Positions 3,409 to 32,418 of a stretch of 64,000 nucleotides of DNA are shown here, in pieces. Numbering within the stretch: the first letter of the stretch is position 1; each line of letters begins with the position of its first letter. The notes below the pieces were generated by a model. It saw only the letters and a list, made by a program, of their open reading frames with translations, searched no databases and was not told the origin of the DNA. The DNA is taken from positions 62,001 through 126,000 of IMG/VR virus record IMGVR_UViG_3300019776_000324; one strand, written 5' to 3'. Position numbers and translations under genes: made by a program.

Positions 3409-3783
3409 TTAAACATAGGTAGCACGACGCTGTTGTTGGTCAAAAAAGATACTCAACAACTGTGCATTTGTGCTTGGAACTACAGCTACGCCTAGTTGAA
3501 TTAATAGGCCGTTTTCTTGAGGAAATAGTTGCATGCCGCTGATATACACTCTAGGATCACCGGCGCAAACTCTTTGTATTTCTTGAGTAATAAGTGCGTG
3601 AGTGTCAGCTGTCTGGTTTTCAAACAAGAAATTCCAGATAACTGTTCCATATCCAGGGCGGCCAACTAGCTCACCTTGGCGAATGTTAAATGCGTTTAGT
3701 AGGTCAATTTTAATTAAATCAAAGTCTACACTAGTAAACTTCTTATTTTGACCAATAGTGTTAAATCCAATGAATGTAGGCAT
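3409..3783 (-). CDS. gp25: Baseplate wedge / sheath initiator (gp25/GPW family)
   Basis: 124 aa with LLNAFNIRQGELVGRPGYGTVIWNFLFE...DPRV gp25 motif; lies between gp5 and gp6. Confidence 0.9.
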   Translation of the reverse strand: MPTFIGFNTIGQNKKFTSVDFDLIKIDLLNAFNIRQGELVGRPGYGTVIWNFLFENQTADTHALITQEIQRVCAGDPRVYISGMQLFPQENGLLIQLGVAVVPSTNAQLLSIFFDQQQRRATYV

Positions 3784-3814
3784 ACTGTATTTACTCTATA
3801 ATAAAAACTCAAGA

Positions 3815-5572
3815 TTATCCAAAAATATTTGCTGCACTGCCTAGTAGCTGACTGCCTTGTGTTCTTAATCCTTGTAAAAAGTTCTGTGCAGCAGTGATAT
3901 CGGCAGAGGCATTTAAAGATGCAGATCCAGGTGCAATATAATCAAATTGTGGCACTGGGATTTTAGAACTACCTAAAATTCGAGTAAATGCTGTGTTAAC
4001 AACTGAACGACTTACAGTATTTGTGAATCCGGCAGCGACTTTTGTAGCACTAACTAGACTGTCACCACCACCGCCAAATAATCCACCCAAACTACCAAGA
4101 CTACCAAGTCCGCCAAAATTTGCCAAACTTGAAAAATTACCTAGACTAGCCAAATTGCTCAAGCCTGGTATTGCAGAAGTTAAACTACTCAAACTGCCTA
4201 GGTTACTTAAATTACCTAGGTTACCTAGACTACTAAGTCCAGGAAGTCCGGCGGTTAAACTGCTCAAACTTGGCAAACTACTTAAATTAAAATTGCCAAG
4301 ATTTGATAAGCTAGTCAATGGATTAGAAAAAGTACTAGCAAATTGTGAAGCTTTACCTAGCACATCAAGATTTTGAATATTTGCAGCCAGGCCAGCCAAG
4401 TTTGGCGGAAGTAAACTGGTTAAGTTGCCGGGCAACGAACCCAAGTTTAAATTTGTTAATTTAGTTATGTCTCCCAAGCCAACTGACTTGGCCCAGCTGG
4501 TTGCAAGGTTAGTTCCAAATTTACTAGCATTAGCTACCAATGCGCCTATGTCGCCAGTGATTGTATTTTTCAACGCACTTGTTATGGCAGGACTAAGATT
4601 TGTTAAATTTGATGCGCCGGTTGCCAACGATCCAGGGTTAGTAAGCGGAGTTGATAATAAATTAGCCAACGGAGTGTTTGCTGCCGATAATCCAGAAGTT
4701 GTTGGAACTGAAATGGCTATTCCTGTGGCTGCACTCACAGCTGATATTGTTTGCAATCCGCTTTGTGTGTAAACATACCCTCGCATTGCGCTGGCTGGTT
4801 GAGTTGCTGGCGGAGTGATTACTCCAGTGGCTGTTAAACTTTCGTAACCATTTCGCATCAATGTTAATTGTGCAGAGTTTTGGTCAGACAATGAAATTAA
4901 AAATTCATCTAGACTATAAATTCCATTGAGCCCTGTCCAAATGCCAGGACTATTCATAGTGCTTACAAAGTCATTAGGATCTATAGCAATAAATCTAAGG
5001 TAAGTTCCGGGCTTAACATAACCAGCTTGTTCAAGTTGCTCGCAGAATAATCCGTAGATACCGATACCAGTTATTTGATTTACAATTGTCTGATTTGCTG
5101 TTGTTGTATTAATTGTAGGAGTAATAATTCCTTGATTTTGTCTTTGCTGACTAGTAAAGTTAGCAACCTGTGCCATGAGTCCTTGCACCTGACTAACATT
5201 GAGTGGCCCTATTTCAGTTGGCGCGAATGTGTTATCGGCATTAATATTAACAAAATCTGCCTGTGTAATTGGATTCTCTAACGGAACATTGATTAGATTT
5301 GGAATACTGCCGCTAATTGTTGGTATGCCGCTGGTAATCGATAATACTACTATATCGTCTACTCCAGCTGTTCCTCGCTCTAATCGACTAAGAGCAAACT
5401 TCACTGCTGCAGAGGGTGCTCCTCCTATACTTTGACCAGGAGCAAACCCTACTAGAGTTCCGCTGGCAACTTGACTATAAAAAATATAATCAGCTTCGGC
5501 CTGGGTAGTTCCTTCTGGAGCTTCTAGGGTAAAGGTTGCGCCCGACGGTAAGGTATATTTAAATTGACTCAT
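3815..5572 (-). CDS. Baseplate-associated protein with possible degenerate lysozyme-like segment and low-complexity L/G/S/N C-terminal half
   Basis: 585 aa, ATGA overlap with gp5; GIYGL..QLEQAGYVKPG..WTGLNGI..LDEFL segment; LGNLGNLSNLGSLSSL tract. Confidence 0.55.
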   Translation of the reverse strand: MSQFKYTLPSGATFTLEAPEGTTQAEADYIFYSQVASGTLVGFAPGQSIGGAPSAAVKFALSRLERGTAGVDDIVVLSITSGIPTISGSIPNLINVPLENPITQADFVNINADNTFAPTEIGPLNVSQVQGLMAQVANFTSQQRQNQGIITPTINTTTANQTIVNQITGIGIYGLFCEQLEQAGYVKPGTYLRFIAIDPNDFVSTMNSPGIWTGLNGIYSLDEFLISLSDQNSAQLTLMRNGYESLTATGVITPPATQPASAMRGYVYTQSGLQTISAVSAATGIAISVPTTSGLSAANTPLANLLSTPLTNPGSLATGASNLTNLSPAITSALKNTITGDIGALVANASKFGTNLATSWAKSVGLGDITKLTNLNLGSLPGNLTSLLPPNLAGLAANIQNLDVLGKASQFASTFSNPLTSLSNLGNFNLSSLPSLSSLTAGLPGLSSLGNLGNLSNLGSLSSLTSAIPGLSNLASLGNFSSLANFGGLGSLGSLGGLFGGGGDSLVSATKVAAGFTNTVSRSVVNTAFTRILGSSKIPVPQFDYIAPGSASLNASADITAAQNFLQGLRTQGSQLLGSAANIFG

Positions 5573-16118: not shown

Positions 16119-17878
16119 TACAAATTAAAAATTTAACTGTTCGTAACTTTATGAGTGTAGGTAACGCTACACAAGCTGTGGACTTTGATCGTAACGATCT
16201 TACACTGGTACTAGGCGAGAACTTGGACTTAGGCGGTGACGGAAGTCGTAACGGAACAGGTAAAACTACAATTATCAATGCTCTTAGTTACGCCTTGTAC
16301 GGACAAGCATTAAGTAATATTCGCAAAGACAATCTAGTTAACAAGACCAACGGCAAAGGCATGTTGGTAAGTTTGGATTTTGTTGTTGGCAATCAAGAAT
16401 ATAAGATTGAGCGTGGTCGCAAGCCCAATGTACTTAGGTTCTATGTCAACAACAAAGAACAAGAAATTACAGATGATGCACAAGGCGATTCAAGAGAAAC
16501 ACAAGAAGCTATTGAACATACCCTAGGGCTTAGTCATGACATGTTCAAGCATATCCTAGCACTCAATACTTACACAGAACCGTTTTTAAGTTTAAAAGCC
16601 AACGATCAGCGTACAATTATTGAGCAGTTGTTAGGTATTACCATGCTGTCAGAACGGGCAGACAAGATCAAAGAGCTTAATAAATCTACTAAAGATGGAA
16701 TAACACAAGAAGAGTTTCGTATTCGTGCTGTGCAAGAAGCTAACAAGCGCATTGAAGAACAAATTACGGCACTCAAGCGTAGACAAACAATGTGGACCGA
16801 CAAGCATGAGCAAGATATCAAGGAACTTGAGAAGGCCTTATCGTCGTTACAGAATATACAGATTGAAGACGAGATTAGAGCGCACAAAGATCATAAGGAA
16901 TGGGATCAAAAGCGCAAGGACATCAATGAACTTTCGTCGCAGATCAGCAGAACGAAACTGGACATCAGCCGGGAGGAAAAGCTGGTTGCCAAACTATCTA
17001 AAGAACTCGAGACGCTTTCAAAACACGAATGTCATACATGCGGTCAGTCCTTTCACGACAGTAAGCACCAACAAGTTTTGGAAGCGAAACAGAAGGATCT
17101 GGCAGTGGCAAGAGAAAACTGCCAAGCTCATAGCACCCTGTTATCAGAACTACAGGTTGCCCACGACTCCCTGGGCCCGTTAGGAAAACCTCCTACCATG
17201 TTCTACGACAAAGAAGAAGATGCAATACATCATCAGGCTACTTTAACCAACTTAGAAAAACAAATTGCTGAAAAATCCACAGAGGTAGACCCTTATGGAG
17301 AGCAAATTGAAGAAATGCAACAGCAAGCCCTACAGGAGGTAACATATGACACACTTAATGAACTTACTCGCTTACAAGAACATCAAGAGTTCTTGCTCAA
17401 ACTACTCACAAGCAAAGACTCGTTTATCCGTAAAAAAATTATTGAACAAAATCTTAGCTATCTAAATGCTAGACTAACACACTACTTAGATCGTGTGGGC
17501 TTGCCGCATACTGTGGTATTCCAAAACGATCTGACTGTCAGCATCGAAGAGCTAGGTCGTGAGCTGGACTTTGATAACTTATCTAGAGGTGAACGCAATC
17601 GTTTGATCTTGAGTATGAGCTGGGCATTCCGTGATGTGTTTGAAAGCCTGTATCAGCCTATTAACTTGTTGTTTATAGATGAAATGATTGACAACGGATT
17701 GGATACACAAGGTGTTGAAAGCAGTCTAGCATTACTAAAACAAATGAGCCGTGAACGACACAAGAGTATTTGGCTAGTAAGTCACAGAGATGAACTTGCT
17801 GGTCGTGTAGAGAACATACTCAAAGTTGTTAAGGAAAACGGCTTTACAAGTTACAACACGGATGTAGAAATAGCGTGA
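16115..17878 (+). CDS. gp46: Recombination ATPase subunit (Rad50/SbcC-like)
   Basis: Walker A NGTGKTT, CHTC zinc hook in coiled coil, LSRGE signature, FIDE Walker B, VSH. Confidence 0.95.
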   Translation: MIQIKNLTVRNFMSVGNATQAVDFDRNDLTLVLGENLDLGGDGSRNGTGKTTIINALSYALYGQALSNIRKDNLVNKTNGKGMLVSLDFVVGNQEYKIERGRKPNVLRFYVNNKEQEITDDAQGDSRETQEAIEHTLGLSHDMFKHILALNTYTEPFLSLKANDQRTIIEQLLGITMLSERADKIKELNKSTKDGITQEEFRIRAVQEANKRIEEQITALKRRQTMWTDKHEQDIKELEKALSSLQNIQIEDEIRAHKDHKEWDQKRKDINELSSQISRTKLDISREEKLVAKLSKELETLSKHECHTCGQSFHDSKHQQVLEAKQKDLAVARENCQAHSTLLSELQVAHDSLGPLGKPPTMFYDKEEDAIHHQATLTNLEKQIAEKSTEVDPYGEQIEEMQQQALQEVTYDTLNELTRLQEHQEFLLKLLTSKDSFIRKKIIEQNLSYLNARLTHYLDRVGLPHTVVFQNDLTVSIEELGRELDFDNLSRGERNRLILSMSWAFRDVFESLYQPINLLFIDEMIDNGLDTQGVESSLALLKQMSRERHKSIWLVSHRDELAGRVENILKVVKENGFTSYNTDVEIA

Positions 17879-18888
17879 CATTAGCAACCTGGCACTTCCA
17901 TATTGAGATATCAAGCAAGTGTACCTTGCGTTGTCCTCGGTGCGCACGACAAGAAGTGCCAGACAGTTTGATCAATACCGAATTAGATTTAGAGTTTTTC
18001 AAACGCAACTTTACTGAAAAATTTATTTTGGATAATGTTGAGAAGATCACATTCTGCGGCGATGACGGTGATCCTATCTATGCACACGATCTTATTCCTG
18101 TAATTGATTATATCAAACGCATTAAGCCTGTACAAATTGTTATTATTACCAACGGTTCACACAAAAAGCCAGAATGGTGGCGTGGACTTGGTAGTGTATT
18201 AACTTCTCAAGATACTGTACATTTTAGTATAGATGGCTGGGATAACGAATCCAACAATCTGTATAGGGTCAACAGTGATTTTAACAGCATACTCGAAGGT
18301 GTAGCCAATCTGCGTTCAACTAGTAGTTGCAGAACAGTTTGGGCTGCTATTGCATTCAAGTTTAACGAAGATCATATCACCAACATAGTATCTATGGCGC
18401 AAAGCTACGGGTTTGATGCTGTACAGTTTACAAAGAGTACTAAGTTTGGTAGTGTATATCCAAGTTATGGCAACGATGATCCGCTTGAACCTAGTAGAAA
18501 GTTTGTTAGCAGCTCGCATAGATTTGAAAGAGATGTTATACTGTTAAGCTCGCGTGGGTTACATCCATCTGTAGATGTAAAGAATATTGAACTGTATAAA
18601 TCAGTTAAAGAAGTAAATGGCGTTAAACCGCTATGTGAGATTGGAAACAAAGGACTGTATATTGATGCTCGCGGTAGATTGTTTCCGTGTTGCTGGGTAG
18701 CTAATCGTTACGCACACAATACAGAATGGCAACAGCTTGCTAATCAATTTGACCTCAATCAAAGAACATTAACAGATGTATTAGTAGATCCGTTTTGGAC
18801 AACAGAATTTAAAACATTTAAGTGGCAAGAGTGTCAAAACAAGTGTAATGCCAAGAAAGTGGACGAAAAATATGCAACTCAGTGGTGA
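17875..18888 (+). CDS. Radical SAM enzyme with C-terminal SPASM-like Cys cluster
   Basis: CTLRCPRC, GDDGDP, ITNG; C-terminal C..FPCCW..CQNKC. Confidence 0.88.
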   Translation: MTLATWHFHIEISSKCTLRCPRCARQEVPDSLINTELDLEFFKRNFTEKFILDNVEKITFCGDDGDPIYAHDLIPVIDYIKRIKPVQIVIITNGSHKKPEWWRGLGSVLTSQDTVHFSIDGWDNESNNLYRVNSDFNSILEGVANLRSTSSCRTVWAAIAFKFNEDHITNIVSMAQSYGFDAVQFTKSTKFGSVYPSYGNDDPLEPSRKFVSSSHRFERDVILLSSRGLHPSVDVKNIELYKSVKEVNGVKPLCEIGNKGLYIDARGRLFPCCWVANRYAHNTEWQQLANQFDLNQRTLTDVLVDPFWTTEFKTFKWQECQNKCNAKKVDEKYATQW

Positions 18889-18906
18889 GATGATAACTAT
18901 AAGTCC

Positions 18907-19335
18907 ATGGTATGGCTGTATGAAAACACTCAAATTGAAACTTTACCCGAAGATTGTGTCGGCTTTGTTTATTTGATCACAAATAACATCTCTGGCAGAA
19001 AGTATATTGGAAAGAAATTAGCAAAATTTAGTAAGACAACATACAAAGTAGTAAAATTAAAGAACGGCAACAAGAAGCGCAAGAAAATTAAAAGTAAAAT
19101 AGATTCAGACTGGCAGCTATACTATGGAAGCAACGATCAACTCAACAAAGACATTGCAGAGCTAGGCTCAGACAACTTCACAAGAGAAATATTATTTTAT
19201 TGTAAATCAAAAGCAGAATGCAGTTATGTAGAAGCTAGAGAACAATTTAATCATAGAGTATTAGAATCAGATGACTATTACAATGGGCAGATAGTTTGCC
19301 GCATACACGGTAGTCACATAAAAAACAAAATTTAG
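18907..19335 (+). CDS. Compact GIY-YIG (Seg-like) endonuclease
   Basis: GFVYLITN..GRKYIGKK, YYGS, FTREIL, EAREQ, YYNG; strongly basic insert KLKNGNKKRKKIKSK; 142 aa. Confidence 0.85.
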   Translation: MVWLYENTQIETLPEDCVGFVYLITNNISGRKYIGKKLAKFSKTTYKVVKLKNGNKKRKKIKSKIDSDWQLYYGSNDQLNKDIAELGSDNFTREILFYCKSKAECSYVEAREQFNHRVLESDDYYNGQIVCRIHGSHIKNKI

Positions 19336-19777
19336 ATAGGCAGCTTTACTGACTCTGTGGTAAGTGTATATGGCTTACCCCCATCGAAGAACGGTGTGAT
19401 ACCCGGTCTGGAAAACTTTGGGCGTCAAAGGCAATTGCTAACTTAAGGCAACAAATGGTTTGAGCTCTGTAGAAAAAGATACAACTCATGCTTATAGGAC
19501 TTGGATTTATTATCGGGTCACTAGGGTTCCGTTGATTTGTGAAGCTAGAGTAAGGGGTACCGGTCAACCGCCTCTGCGTAGGAAACTACAATCTCTTTAT
19601 AATAAATGACTGCTGTCACTCGGATAATGTGAAAAGAAGTCAATTCACCGTGGCACGGTGAATTGTGACCACATAATCTGGATAATGCTAAAGAAAAGCA
19701 ATTATGTTCTAATTAAAACATTATGTCTGAGCTTTAGCGAAAGACATAGATTAGCGTAGCTAATCTTTCAATGACAC
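19336..19777 (+). ncRNA. Putative large structured RNA (or structured ssDNA/origin element) directly after the GIY-YIG gene
   Basis: Longest non-coding gap in the window; more than 10 helices found by eye, including a GAAA-tetraloop hairpin (19578-19589), a perfect long-range 9-bp pair (19505-19513/19599-19607) and a 12-bp inverted repeat (19641-19665). Strand inferred from the GNRA loop and G-U pairs. Confidence 0.6.
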
Positions 19778-20113
19778 TCAGAATGTATCAGGCCAATCAC
19801 GAAACAGTGCATGTTGTATGTCTCCAGCAACAAACTGATTAAATGATTTATGTTTCACTTCGAGTTCTCCTTCTAATGGAGCAACACGACGGAAAGCACT
19901 ATCCATCTGTGCCATGTCTTTGAATTCCATAAGTATCATCCATTCAGGCATGTCAGCGATACTACGAAAACCCATCTTGCAACGAGTAATTCTGTATGAT
20001 TCCATTTTGCCTTCGCTGATCAAATGATCAAAGAAACTGCGCATGCCATTGGTCCATTCCAGATCAGAAATGTCGCCTTCTTTGTTTGCCCAGATTGTGT
20101 ATAAGTCTGCCAT
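19778..20113 (-). CDS. DUF6614-like protein
   Basis: MADLYTIWAN..SDLEW..FFDHL..GKMESYRITRCKMGF..PEWMILMEF..MAQMDSAF..V..H pattern recalled for DUF6614. Confidence 0.6.
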   Translation of the reverse strand: MADLYTIWANKEGDISDLEWTNGMRSFFDHLISEGKMESYRITRCKMGFRSIADMPEWMILMEFKDMAQMDSAFRRVAPLEGELEVKHKSFNQFVAGDIQHALFRDWPDTF

Positions 20114-26041: not shown

Positions 26042-26049
26042 ATACTAGT

Positions 26050-26271
26050 ATGATCCTCAGCGAAATCTATAATCGTAGCCCTGAAGCTTATCAAGATGTA
26101 AGTCAAGATAACAGTCAGCCTACGCTTAATGACACAAGAAAAACTCGTTTAACTCTGCGTCAATTAAACAAATTGCGCCAGATGAACGATGTTCGTACCT
26201 ACGAATATAAAGAAAAACTTAAACTAGTTAAAAAGCAATACGCACCTCCTCCTGCTGCTCCAGCAATGTAA
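26050..26271 (+). CDS. Small head-module protein
   Basis: 73 aa between portal and prohead core; DTRKTRLTLRQLNKLR..QY; TAAATA 5 nt upstream. Confidence 0.7.
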   Translation: MILSEIYNRSPEAYQDVSQDNSQPTLNDTRKTRLTLRQLNKLRQMNDVRTYEYKEKLKLVKKQYAPPPAAPAM

Positions 26272-26385
26272 TATAGACCTTAGTCTATATTTTTCATTCA
26301 AAAACACCCAGTTTTCTGCCTCAAAAGTACCGAGTTTATAGATAATATGTAAATATATCTACGAGCCATACCTTAAGGAGAAATT

Positions 26386-31477: not shown

Positions 31478-31560
31478 TGTCAACGCAATAAGGCGTTTTA
31501 TGCAGGTATTAAACCCCCTGCGTAGCGGCTAAAACCCGCATAGGACTTCTTTAAGGAGAA
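31478..31560 (+). promoter_or_regulatory. Structured late 5' leader with three hairpins
   Basis: After TAAATA (31470-31475): AACGC/GCGTT, TATGCAGG/CCTGCGTA and GCGG-CTAAAAC-CCGC stems, then AAGGAG RBS. Confidence 0.5.
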
Positions 31561-31566
31561 AACAAA

Positions 31567-32418
31567 ATGGGTCGTCCACTTAAAATTCAAAAATATTCTG
31601 CGATGTCTGGTATCTTTTATGATAACAACAATCAAGGAACAACAGCTCAAGCTGTAGCAATCGATCAGGGATATCCTCCGTTTGCAGCTCCAACTTCATT
31701 GGATACACCAACAGTAGTACTACCACAACCAGTAACAACTCCAGTTCCGTTTACTGGCGTAGTTGGCGGCCTTCGTGGCGGTGCTGTAAGCGCAACATAT
31801 CCAGTTGTTGAGTGCCAAGTTAATATCGCTAAACCAGATGGTACTGGCTTTGGTGTACACAACGGCGCAATCATCCGTCAAAAAGGTGCTCGCAAGTTTA
31901 TGGTAGTTGACTATACAAGTATTGCTGACGAAGCAATTATTCTTGGCGCAACTTACATGATTGCTAGTTTAGGTAGTACTAATTGGCAGTTATTTGGTGC
32001 TCCTGCTGGTGCAGCAGTTGGTACAATTTTTACTGCTACAGCCGCTGGCTCTAACTCAGGTAACGGAACTGCTTATGCAGTTGGTACTTGTGTATTAGTT
32101 AATGATGGCAGTCCAACAGTTGGTAATATGAGTGTCACTATGGCAGTTGGTGGTGATAGTACTGCTGTTTATATCAGTAAGTTAACTAACAAGTTCGTAC
32201 AAGACTTCAATGGTGGTGAAACAGGCGGCAACGCTAACACCGGTGATGTTTGGGCCGAGACTGATGTTATTGACAACATTGAGTATGCAGCTAACTTCTT
32301 TACAGACGAAAGCACATTTGCTAAATCAGGCGCTGAAGTTGACACATGGGTTGGCACACAACAACCTGGTAGCAACGGTACTCTTGAATTGGCACAAGTT
32401 GAGAAGTATACTTCTTAA
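31567..32418 (+). CDS. Probable abundant virion structural protein (decoration-type)
   Basis: MGRPLK start, IIRQKGARKFMV and ISKLTNK motifs; own late promoter, strong RBS and terminator. Confidence 0.6.
   Translation: MGRPLKIQKYSAMSGIFYDNNNQGTTAQAVAIDQGYPPFAAPTSLDTPTVVLPQPVTTPVPFTGVVGGLRGGAVSATYPVVECQVNIAKPDGTGFGVHNGAIIRQKGARKFMVVDYTSIADEAIILGATYMIASLGSTNWQLFGAPAGAAVGTIFTATAAGSNSGNGTAYAVGTCVLVNDGSPTVGNMSVTMAVGGDSTAVYISKLTNKFVQDFNGGETGGNANTGDVWAETDVIDNIEYAANFFTDESTFAKSGAEVDTWVGTQQPGSNGTLELAQVEKYTS

What the first reader, a model, noticed from the sequence alone, without database searches (positions are those of the whole stretch)
18894..19777. Compact GIY-YIG nuclease followed by a ~440-nt densely structured, probably pseudoknotted element: candidate nuclease-RNA system
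Seen: in a genome packed with overlapping genes, the only large gap starts at the stop codon of a 142-aa GIY-YIG protein that has a very basic insert and no obvious separate DNA-recognition domain. The gap is almost fully helical. Local stems: GGTAAGT/GCTTACC (19359-19379), CATCG/CGGTG (19382-19396), CTTTGG/TCAAAG (19416-19430), TTGCT/GGCAA (19435-19451), GTAG-GAAA-CTAC (19578-19589), and a long compound hairpin (19621-19680). Long-range pairs: GTGAtaCCCGG(19396-19406)/TCGGGTCAC(19513-19521), ATTTATTAT(19505-19513)/ATAATAAAT(19599-19607) and GTTGATT(19531-19537)/GGTCAAC(19562-19568); the first two cross, implying a pseudoknot or a switch. G-U pairs and the GNRA loop favour a + strand RNA. A late-promoter-like TAACTA lies 7 nt before the nuclease ATG, so gene and RNA could be one transcript. 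I found no group I/II intron, RNase P, tmRNA or tRNA core. Known: compact nucleases with adjacent large RNAs (IscB/HEARO, TnpB) turned out to be RNPs. Inference: an undescribed GIY-YIG ribonucleoprotein, a new large phage ncRNA or ribozyme, or an origin activated by this nuclease.
Basis: partly seen in the sequence, partly recalled or inferred. Interest (0 to 1): 0.85.

Follow-up and report, generated by a model that had tools for sequence, protein, structure and literature searches.

The report
Modular pseudoknotted phage RNA, nuclease-independent
The 440-base gap encodes a conserved, doubly pseudoknotted non-coding RNA of abundant uncultured freshwater phages; it is probably not a partner of the neighbouring nuclease, and it carries two short direct repeats that always change together for reasons nobody can yet explain.

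Summary
The gap 19336-19777 is real, non-coding and holds a + strand structured RNA of about 430 nt. In 99 distinct homologues, 76 proposed base pairs are 95% canonical and 53 show compensatory double changes. G-U outnumbers A-C 880 to 97, which sets the strand.

Four do not.

The RNA is modular:
- a variable 5' domain, replaced in sister phages by the known orphan Rfam motif Polynucleobacter-1
- an invariant double-pseudoknot core
- a "twin-site" module
- two terminal hairpins at the point where transcription converges

The 142-aa GIY-YIG protein is a full-length member of a large stand-alone family found in 287 cultured phages, none of which has this RNA. Three observations argue against a nuclease-RNA particle:
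- unrelated genes separate gene and RNA in about a fifth of loci
- a PD-(D/E)XK nuclease replaces the GIY-YIG in some loci
- one bacterial-type locus has the RNA with no nuclease nearby

So the ribonucleoprotein idea is poorly supported, while "new large phage ncRNA" is well supported.

The strangest feature is unexplained. Two direct 7-9-nt repeats, 50-65 nt apart, always carry the same sequence, although that sequence differs between phages. No complementary partner was found.

The parts
18907..19335 (+). 142-aa stand-alone GIY-YIG nuclease gene. This is context, not shown to be part of the RNA system.
   Evidence: PF19835 E=9e-33 over residues 3-129. phrog_447 E=1.5e-37. In 49 diverse homologues Y22, Y33, G35, E109 and N126 are invariant and R93 nearly so.
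19338..19344 (+). Leader motif AGGCAGC (consensus AGGCA[A/G]C). Probable 5' end or processing site of the RNA.
   Evidence: Kept about 10 nt before helix H0 in most loci, whichever gene lies upstream; absent in a few, e.g. L027 and L061. That it marks the 5' end is inference.
19351..19426 (+). 5' domain. H0 (19351-53/19424-26) closes hairpin H1 (19359-79) and H2 (19380-83/19419-22), which encloses hairpin H3 (19388-94/19403-09).
   Evidence: Compensatory changes in H0, H2 and H3. H1 changes visible in the alignment. Replaced by Rfam Polynucleobacter-1 in subtype B relatives.
19436..19450 (+). Hairpin H4 (UGCU/GGCA).
   Evidence: 96% canonical, 3 pairs with double changes, 103 G-U cells.
19461..19488 (+). 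Hairpin H5 (19461-64/19485-88) with inner H5b.
   Evidence: H5 is 99.5% canonical with 72 compensatory cells. H5b is weaker at 73%.
19498..19519 (+). Hairpin H6 (GACUUGG/UCGGGUC). Its loop 19505-12 forms pseudoknot PK1.
   Evidence: 97% canonical, 314 G-U cells against 1 A-C.
19520..19575 (+). Near-invariant core. It holds the PK2 5' strand 19531-36, which pairs with 19563-68 in the loop of H8; the 5' strand of helix P (19547-50); and H8 (19553-57/19571-75).
   Evidence: Invariant columns. PK2 pair 19535:19564 is A-U 116, U-A 24, G-C 1, with 1 exception. H8 is 99.8% canonical.
19578..19589 (+). Hairpin H9 with a GAAA loop. Absent in subtype B.
   Evidence: 4 pairs, all with double changes. Its absence in subtype B is seen.
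19593..19607 (+). 3' strand of helix P (19593-96) and 3' strand of PK1 (19600-07).
   Evidence: P pair 19547:19596 is U-A 47, A-U 46. PK1 has 7 of 8 pairs with double changes. In divergent relatives PK1 is replaced by CUGAU/AUCAG or UUAGCG/CGCUAA.
19606..19630 (+). Twin-site unit 1: AUGAC, then about 9 nt, then CUC, then rep1 (GGAUAAUGU, 19622-30).
   Evidence: Varies in parallel with unit 2.
19641..19665 (+). Hairpin H10, a 12-bp perfect inverted repeat in the window.
   Evidence: 98.7% canonical, 3 pairs with double changes. Different stems in subtypes B and C.
19664..19688 (+). Twin-site unit 2: GUGAC, then 6 nt, then AUCU, then rep2 (GGAUAAUGC, 19680-88).
   Evidence: The first 7 nt are the same as in rep1 in essentially all loci parsed. 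H10-to-rep2 spacing is 14 nt in 98 of 108 modules.
19689..19722 (+). A-rich linker, variable in length and sequence.
   Evidence: Alignment.
19723..19747 (+). Hairpin T1 with the conserved internal motif GAGC-NNNN-GCGAA.
   Evidence: All 8 pairs have double changes, 176 compensatory cells. Its G-U/A-C ratio is strand-neutral. It travels with the RNA when genes are inserted downstream.
19748..19766 (+). Hairpin T2, terminator-like. Probably bidirectional, at the convergence point.
   Evidence: 6 pairs with double changes. Flagged as a terminator on the - strand; only UCUUU follows it on the + strand.
19778..20113 (-). Convergent DUF6614 gene (context).
   Evidence: PF20319 E=4.5e-21.

Best explanation
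The tract is the gene for an autonomous, modular, structured non-coding RNA of about 430 nt on the + strand.

**How it is probably made (inferred).** It appears to be the last element of the rightward transcription unit (gp46-like SbcC, radical SAM, small nuclease). It is probably cut out of, or stabilised at, the 3' end of that transcript. It ends in two conserved hairpins (T1, T2) exactly where the leftward genes converge.

**Modules (shown by covariation):**
1. An exchangeable 5' domain. The window has its own form. Sister phages carry the orphan Rfam motif Polynucleobacter-1, and a third form exists.
2. A near-invariant core locked by two pseudoknots (PK1, PK2).
3. A twin-site module: two bipartite units on either side of hairpin H10, each presenting the same 7-9-nt sequence.
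4. The terminal hairpins T1 and T2.

**How it probably works (inferred, not shown).** I think it acts in trans as a stable scaffold RNA. The invariant pseudoknot core would hold a conserved cellular or phage factor. The twin sites would serve a step that needs two identical single-stranded sites.

The GIY-YIG protein next door is a conserved stand-alone phage nuclease. Its adjacency reflects gene order, not an obligate partnership.
For: **Conservation.** The gap is 75-90% identical across about 40 of the first 80 loci, similar to the flanking genes.

**Structure.** 76 pairs, 94.9% canonical, 53 with compensatory changes; slid controls reach 37-46% canonical. The top mutual-information pairs are canonical helix pairs. 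PK1 and PK2 are supported by compensatory changes across subtypes.

**Strand.** G-U 880 against A-C 97.

**Non-coding.** No conserved ORF.

**Autonomy.**
- Genes are inserted on either side while the RNA with T1/T2 stays intact and always sits at the convergence point.
- The upstream nuclease can be GIY-YIG or PF24608 PD-(D/E)XK.
- The RNA occurs without either nuclease in L204.
- The leader motif is kept in most loci, whatever gene lies upstream.

**Modularity.** The 5' half equals RF01718 at 46-110 bits in L034, L046, L049, L053 and L204. There is no hit in the window. Subtype C (L037) keeps only the twin-site module and T1/T2.

**GIY-YIG without the RNA.** 287 phage records carry the protein. 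The RNA finds nothing in 50,697 phage genomes.
Against: - No expression data were available. Transcription, RNA ends and processing are inferred only from covariation and strand asymmetry.
- No promoter was found. The sigma-70 scan is at chance level.
- T1 and T2 are strand-neutral, so they could serve the leftward transcripts instead.
- In the phage loci that could be checked, a small nuclease gene lies within about 2 kb upstream. Two unrelated nuclease families alternate there, which could also be read as a functional link.
- The trans-acting scaffold mechanism has no direct support. The role of the twin sites is unknown.
Confidence: 0.6

Rival explanations
1. Nuclease-RNA system. The RNA binds the upstream small nuclease (GIY-YIG, or PD-(D/E)XK in other phages). 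It guides, activates or restrains that nuclease, with the twin sites acting as guide or target mimics.
For: - The RNA directly follows the GIY-YIG stop codon in most loci.
- Where GIY-YIG is missing, a different small nuclease occupies the position.
- The protein has no separate DNA-binding domain.
- The twin sites are variable, guide-like segments beside a conserved scaffold.
Against: - 0.8-1.9 kb of unrelated genes separate gene and RNA in about 20% of loci.
- L204 has the RNA with no nuclease nearby.
- The GIY-YIG family is widespread without the RNA.
- One RNA serving two unrelated nuclease folds is unlikely.
- No complement of the twin sites was found in 64 kb of the window beyond chance.
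Confidence: 0.12
2. Cis-acting 3'-end element. The structure only stabilises the 3' end of the rightward mRNA and insulates or terminates the two convergent transcription units.
For: - It always lies exactly at the convergence point, whatever genes flank it.
- T1 and T2 are strand-neutral, and T2 scores as a terminator on the - strand.
Against: - About 330 nt of double-pseudoknot structure, with a 55-nt invariant core and matched twin sites, is far more than termination needs.
- The helices upstream of the twin-site module are strongly + strand specific.
- The same RNA appears in the unrelated gene context of L204.
Confidence: 0.12
3. Template or processing RNA. The twin sites are matched donor and acceptor sites for a polymerase template switch, giving tandem-repeat synthesis of the 50-65-nt unit as with telomerase or DRT2/DRT10 ncRNAs. 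Alternatively they are two equivalent cleavage or ligation sites that release or circularise the H10 unit.
For: - The two direct sites are identical, their sequence is free, and no complementary partner exists.
- H10-to-rep2 spacing is fixed at 14 nt.
- A hairpin lies between the sites.

That these processes select for identity as such rests on my general knowledge. Of the cited literature I saw only the abstract of one preprint, listed.
Against: - No reverse transcriptase turned up among the neighbouring genes that were annotated, and the rest of the window was not scanned for one.
- No locus has extra in-register copies of the unit. Third copies of the 7-mer seen in 12 loci lie elsewhere in the RNA and do not co-vary.
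- Tight linkage (about 55 nt) plus recombination could inflate the number of apparently independent concerted changes.
Confidence: 0.1
4. DNA-level element. An origin or recombination hot spot in which the H10 palindrome and the flanking direct repeats are read as DNA, possibly cut by the adjacent structure-specific nuclease.
For: - Perfect 12-bp palindrome flanked by direct repeats.
- Accessory genes turn over on both sides of the element.
- Strand-neutral T1, T2 and H10.
Against: - Most of the element shows strong G-U against A-C asymmetry and two pseudoknots. These make sense only for single-stranded + strand RNA.
Confidence: 0.05

Closest known systems
Polynucleobacter-1 RNA motif (Rfam RF01718; Weinberg et al. 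2010, PMC2864571)
   Same: In sister loci it occupies the position of the window's 5' domain: directly after the same GIY-YIG gene and directly before the same core, twin-site module and T1/T2. It comes from fresh water and its function is unknown.
   Different: The window's own 5' domain does not match RF01718 even at E<=10. The Rfam model (141 nt) ends before the core and twin-site module, and no Rfam 15 family reached threshold on those parts.
cow-rumen-2 RNA motif (Rfam RF02947)
   Same: Same order of elements as the core: a hairpin, then CCGCC, then a hairpin with loop ACMGGAYRACC, then GUAA. Its CAUC/GAUG sits where this RNA has GUUG/CAAC of PK2.
   Different: It scores only 20 bits against a gathering score of 66, with E=0.28 on 621 nt. 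This is a lead, not a match, and its function is also unknown.
Nuclease-associated guide RNAs (HEARO/IscB omega-RNA, TnpB reRNA)
   Same: A large structured RNA next to a compact nuclease gene, with a conserved scaffold beside a variable segment.
   Different: - The adjacency can be broken, and the nuclease family can be swapped or absent.
- The nuclease family is widespread without the RNA.
- No Rfam match.
- The variable segment occurs as two identical copies, not one guide.
Template RNAs with matched repeats (telomerase RNA, DRT2/DRT10 ncRNAs) and the T4 gene 60 bypass signal
   Same: Two identical direct sites with free sequence flank a hairpin. In 95% of 167 loci the site reads a sense codon followed by UAA or UGA, 50-65 nt apart. 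T4 gene 60 has GGA-UAG ... GGA across a 50-nt gap (from my own knowledge).
   Different: No reverse transcriptase gene was seen nearby. No ORF enters the site, and spacing shows no mod-3 constraint. The resemblance is from memory and was not tested.
Large ornate phage-associated RNAs (GOLLD, ROOL)
   Same: Large, multi-pseudoknot, phage-borne and of unknown function.
   Different: No match to their Rfam models. This RNA is much smaller, and there is no evidence of multimerisation.

Membership tests
Rfam RF01718 Polynucleobacter-1 | Covariance-model score at or above the gathering score of 37 bits | tested here: not met
   No match in window 18800-19900 at E<=10, nor at gathering threshold. Relatives L034, L046, L049, L053 and L204 score 46-110 bits.
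Any Rfam 15 family (group I/II intron, RNase P, tmRNA, T-box, HEARO, GOLLD, ROOL and others) | Covariance-model match in the gap | tested here: not met
   0 matches at E<=10. No tRNA or tmRNA by ARAGORN.
Structured non-coding RNA (generic) | Compensatory base-pair changes above controls, strand-specific G-U pairs, and no conserved ORF | tested here: met
GIY-YIG nuclease, SegE-type domain (PF19835) | Profile match above cut-off and conserved Tyr, Tyr-x-Gly, Arg, Glu and Asn | tested here: met
   113.5 bits against a cut-off of 25. Y22, Y33, G35, E109 and N126 are invariant and R93 nearly so.
Seg-type homing endonuclease | GIY-YIG domain plus a C-terminal DNA-binding region (NUMOD/HTH), with sporadic distribution | tested here: not met
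   142 aa with no second domain. Length is conserved across thousands of homologues. It is present in 287 phage records. By contrast, a true Seg-like gene with NUMOD3 is inserted in L009.
RNA-guided nuclease system (IscB/TnpB-like) | Obligate co-occurrence of nuclease gene and RNA | tested here: not met
RNA-guided nuclease system (IscB/TnpB-like) | Physical and functional dependence of the nuclease on the RNA | not testable with these tools
   Needs biochemistry.
Intrinsic terminator | G+C-rich hairpin followed by a U tract on the transcribed strand | tested here: inconclusive
   T2 is a conserved hairpin. On the + strand only UCUUU follows it, and the scan flags it on the - strand.

The most novel reading that the evidence does not exclude
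The twin sites are matched donor and acceptor sites of a copying or hopping process. A polymerase, or another translocating machine, leaves one site and re-pairs at the other. This would make the RNA a template or track for repeat synthesis, or for a programmed jump, in a lytic T4-like phage with no dedicated reverse transcriptase next to it. That would explain why identity of the two sites is conserved while their sequence is free.
Probability: 0.1. Interest if true: 0.9.

Novelty: new variant of a known kind. Interest (0 to 1): 0.68.

Why it matters
- **It gives context to an orphan motif.** Polynucleobacter-1, orphan since 2010, turns out to be one interchangeable 5' module of a larger RNA whose most conserved parts (double-pseudoknot core, twin-site module) have not been described.
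- **The carriers are abundant.** The adjacent protein alone has at least 8000 near-identical metagenomic homologues, so this is likely one of the commoner large phage ncRNAs in lakes.
- **The twin sites are unusual.** Parallel co-variation of two direct repeats with no complementary partner is not what RNA covariation normally shows. It points to a mechanism that requires identity, such as template switching, matched processing or hopping.
- **It is a caution.** A compact nuclease next to a big RNA is not enough to infer an RNA-guided enzyme.

Tried and rejected
- **Truncated homing endonuclease with a decayed C-terminal domain in the gap.** Rejected. The protein is full length for its family, and the pieces read past the stop have no Pfam match.
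- **Known RNA family.** Rfam at gathering and E<=10 thresholds, and ARAGORN, found nothing in the window.
- **Cultured relatives.** blastn of the region and of the 3' module against 50,697 phage genomes gave nothing real.
- **Hidden small gene.** The window's ORFs are not conserved.
- **T4 EndoII or another solved nuclease as a model.** phmmer against the PDB gives only a weak 3r3p hit. A confident AlphaFold model (pLDDT 95.9) finds no Foldseek neighbour in the PDB (best E=0.16). This was uninformative.
- **A partner strand for the twin sites.**
  - No positionally conserved complement within -900 to +600 nt.
  - No third co-varying column.
  - No excess of the motif or its complement in the 64-kb window.
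  - Third copies in 12 loci do not co-vary.
- **Pairing of rep1 with the AUCU before rep2, or the AUCU|RGAU palindrome.** Possible in common variants but lost in ACAU/GCAU variants (my reading).
- **Translational bypass.** No ORF enters the site.
- **RNAalifold on the mixed-subtype MAFFT alignment A1.** It recovered only H8 and H10 because the subtypes are misaligned.
- **L202.** A chance match inside coding sequence.
- **Sigma-70 promoter scan.** At chance level.
Full report
**What is at the coordinates.** The window comes from an uncultured myovirus of the T4 superfamily. Its gp46/SbcC-like protein is at best 54% identical to that of any cultured phage. The ORF 18907-19335 (+) encodes a 142-aa protein, followed by 442 nt without a credible ORF up to a convergent DUF6614 gene at 19778-20113. 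All + frames of the gap are full of stops. The small ORFs in the window's gap are kept open in only 3-7 of 99 homologues. Apart from a 344-nt stretch at 26042-26385, it is the only sizeable non-coding tract in the 64 kb.

**The protein.** It matches Pfam PF19835 (SegE-type GIY-YIG domain) end to end (E=9e-33) and PHROG 447, a 148-position stand-alone family misnamed 'NAD synthetase'.
- At least 8000 near-identical metagenomic proteins exist, nearly all 142 aa.
- A full HMMER scan finds 2152 clusters at 50% identity, mostly 130-165 aa.
- 287 cultured phage genomes encode a homologue, mainly cyanophages but also Melnitz, Sinorhizobium and Stenotrophomonas phages.
- The catalytic Tyr, Tyr-x-Gly, Arg, Glu and Asn are conserved.

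It is therefore neither truncated nor odd, and the basic hairpin lies within the region the family profile covers. A confident AlphaFold model (pLDDT 95.9) found no PDB neighbour. Sequence search of the PDB gave only a weak hit.

**The gap is a conserved structured RNA.** Eighty loci fetched through the protein and 120 fetched through the invariant core motif gave 99 distinct copies of the tract, 57-89% identical to the window.
- Mutual information picks out canonical helices.
- A structure of 76 pairs is 94.9% canonical. 53 pairs show changes on both sides, in 832 compensatory cells. With the 3' partners slid by 1-3 columns the figures are 37-46% canonical and 45-98 cells.
- G-U pairs outnumber A-C 880 to 97, so the RNA is read from the + strand. 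Only the last two hairpins are strand-neutral.
- Folding energy of the single sequence is not decisive: z = -1.9 on the + strand and -2.9 on the - strand.

**Anatomy (window coordinates).**
- Leader motif AGGCAGC, 19338-44. It is conserved in most loci, whatever gene lies upstream.
- H0 (19351-53/19424-26), closing H1 (19359-79) and H2 (19380-83/19419-22). H2 encloses H3.
- H4 (19436-50) and H5 (19461-88).
- H6 (19498-519). Its loop pairs with 19600-07 to form PK1.
- A near-invariant core, 19520-75. Here 19531-36 pairs with the H8 loop 19563-68 to form PK2.
- Helix P (19547-50/19593-96), enclosing H8 and the GAAA hairpin H9.
- The twin-site module, 19606-88, around hairpin H10.
- An A-rich linker.
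- Hairpin T1 (19723-47), with a conserved GAGC...GCGAA internal motif.
- The terminator-like T2 (19748-66).

PK1 is rebuilt with entirely different sequences in divergent relatives (AUUUAUUAU/AUAAUAAAU, CUGAU/AUCAG, UUAGCG/CGCUAA). The PK2 pair 19535:19564 is A-U in 116 copies, U-A in 24 and G-C in 1, with one exception.

**Modularity and a link to a known motif.** nhmmer shows that more distant GIY-YIG loci carry a diverged version that shares only the 3' half. In these 'subtype B' loci the 5' half is the Rfam family Polynucleobacter-1 (RF01718), matched over its full 141 positions:
- 105-110 bits in L034, L046 and L049
- 91 bits in L053
- 46 bits in L204

That motif was reported in 2010 from Burkholderiales and freshwater metagenomes, with no function assigned. 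The window's own 5' half has no Rfam match.

A third form (L037) shares neither 5' domain nor the core motif, but keeps the twin-site module, T1 and T2. The shared core gives only a sub-threshold resemblance to cow-rumen-2 (20 bits against 66), with the same order of elements.

No copy exists in 50,697 deposited phage genomes. In 185,579 reference genomes only eight MAG contigs match, and one of these (L202) is a chance hit.

**Relation to the nuclease.** The RNA starts within a few bases of the GIY-YIG stop in most loci. In about a fifth of them, 0.8-1.9 kb of other genes lie between. The inserted genes include:
- a 340-360-aa family without Pfam hits
- a 260-275-aa family whose N-terminus looks SGNH-like by eye (no Pfam hit)

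The same gene families, and true Seg-type homing endonucleases with NUMOD3, are found on the other side of the RNA in the opposite orientation. The RNA with T1/T2 therefore always marks the convergence point.

In L096, L117, L132, L176 and L147 (and L110, at 1.1 kb) the upstream gene is not GIY-YIG. It is a 168-aa PF24608 PD-(D/E)XK phage endonuclease. In L204, a Pseudomonadota MAG contig, the complete RNA lies between DUF6641/DUF6876 genes and a Fic/Doc-Phd pair, with no nuclease nearby.

Together with the wide occurrence of the protein family without the RNA, this argues against an obligate ribonucleoprotein. The alternation of two unrelated small nucleases next to the gp46-like recombination nuclease gene suggests a shared DNA-structure-specific role. 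That is inference only.

**The unexplained feature.** Two bipartite units (RUGAC, then about 9 nt, then YYY, then a 7-9-mer) flank H10. The two 7-mers are identical within each genome but differ between genomes. At least 12 variants occur: GGAUAAU, AGAUAAU, AGAUGAU, AGAUGAA, GGAUGAU, GGAUGAA, GGAUGAG, ACAUGAA, ACAUAAA, AGACGAA, AGAUCAA and GCAUAAU.
- At each variable position 98 of 99 sequences agree between the two copies; the best of 10,000 shuffles gave 68.
- On a tree built without these columns, position 1 changes at least 17 times, always in both copies. Tight linkage plus recombination may inflate that number, but at least seven distinct substitutions are mirrored.
- The relation is parallel, not antiparallel.
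- The repeat columns co-vary with nothing else in the RNA.
- No complement is positionally conserved within -900 to +600 nt.
- The window holds no excess of the motif or its complement.
- H10-to-rep2 spacing is fixed at 14 nt in 98 of 108 modules, while rep1-to-H10 varies from 8 to 20 nt. The unit is 50-65 nt with no frame constraint.
- In 95% of 167 loci the 7-mer reads NNA-URA.

From general knowledge, the processes that select for identity of two direct sites with free sequence are polymerase template switching or realignment, the overlap regions of site-specific recombination sites, and ribosomal take-off and landing. None could be tested here. No ORF enters the site.

**Verdict.** It is a new, modular, doubly pseudoknotted phage ncRNA. 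Its sister forms contain the orphan Polynucleobacter-1 motif, and its most conserved parts are undescribed. The proposed GIY-YIG ribonucleoprotein is not supported by distribution and synteny, though biochemistry has not excluded it. Function remains inferred. I favour a stable trans-acting scaffold RNA made from the 3' end of the rightward operon (confidence about 0.6 for identity and autonomy, much lower for mechanism).

Noticed in passing
window 31481-31569 (+): Full-length match to the Rfam motif freshwater-2 RNA (RF02980): 67 bits against a gathering score of 50. This is a second orphan freshwater RNA motif in the same phage genome.
   Followed up: no
window 26042-26385: The only other ORF-poor stretch (344 nt, 36% G+C) in the window. 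It was not examined for conservation or structure.
   Followed up: no
L096, L117, L132, L176, L147, L110 (gene just upstream of the RNA): A 168-aa PF24608 PD-(D/E)XK phage endonuclease replaces the GIY-YIG gene at the same position next to gp46. This is a non-orthologous swap of two small nucleases.
   Followed up: partly
L004, L008, L009, L015, L018, L021, L027, L035, L055, L073, L188, L193 (both flanks of the RNA): The RNA sits in a hot spot of gene turnover. The same accessory gene families occur on either side of it, always oriented towards it. They include a 340-360-aa family with no Pfam hit, a 260-275-aa family that looks SGNH-like by eye (no Pfam hit), Seg-like GIY-YIG+NUMOD3 homing endonucleases, and a 687-aa protein.
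   Followed up: partly
L204 2990-4830 (Pseudomonadota MAG contig JBDLTP010000023.1): A complete RNA (Polynucleobacter-1 domain, core, twin sites, T2) lies in a context unlike the phage loci: between DUF6876/DUF6641 genes and a Fic/Doc toxin with a MazE/Phd-like antitoxin.
   Followed up: partly
window 18907-19335 (protein model m9b9be4b48b9f): The AlphaFold model is very confident (pLDDT 95.9, pTM 0.86). It has a long beta-hairpin at residues 40-66 but no Foldseek neighbour in the PDB (best E=0.16), although the sequence is clearly GIY-YIG.
   Followed up: partly
L030 about 3760-3845 and L067 (between H8 and the 3' strand of helix P): An insertion made of ATTATAG-like tandem repeats replaces hairpin H9 in these two relatives.
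   Followed up: no
window 19338-44, 19429-34, 19446-51: Three copies of AGGCA(A/G), any of which could pair with UUGCU at 19435-39. This hints at alternative pairings in the 5' domain.
   Followed up: no
window 17875-18888 (+): A 337-aa radical SAM/SPASM-type gene overlaps the gp46-like gene's stop and ends 18 nt before the GIY-YIG start. It is present in only some relatives.
   Followed up: no
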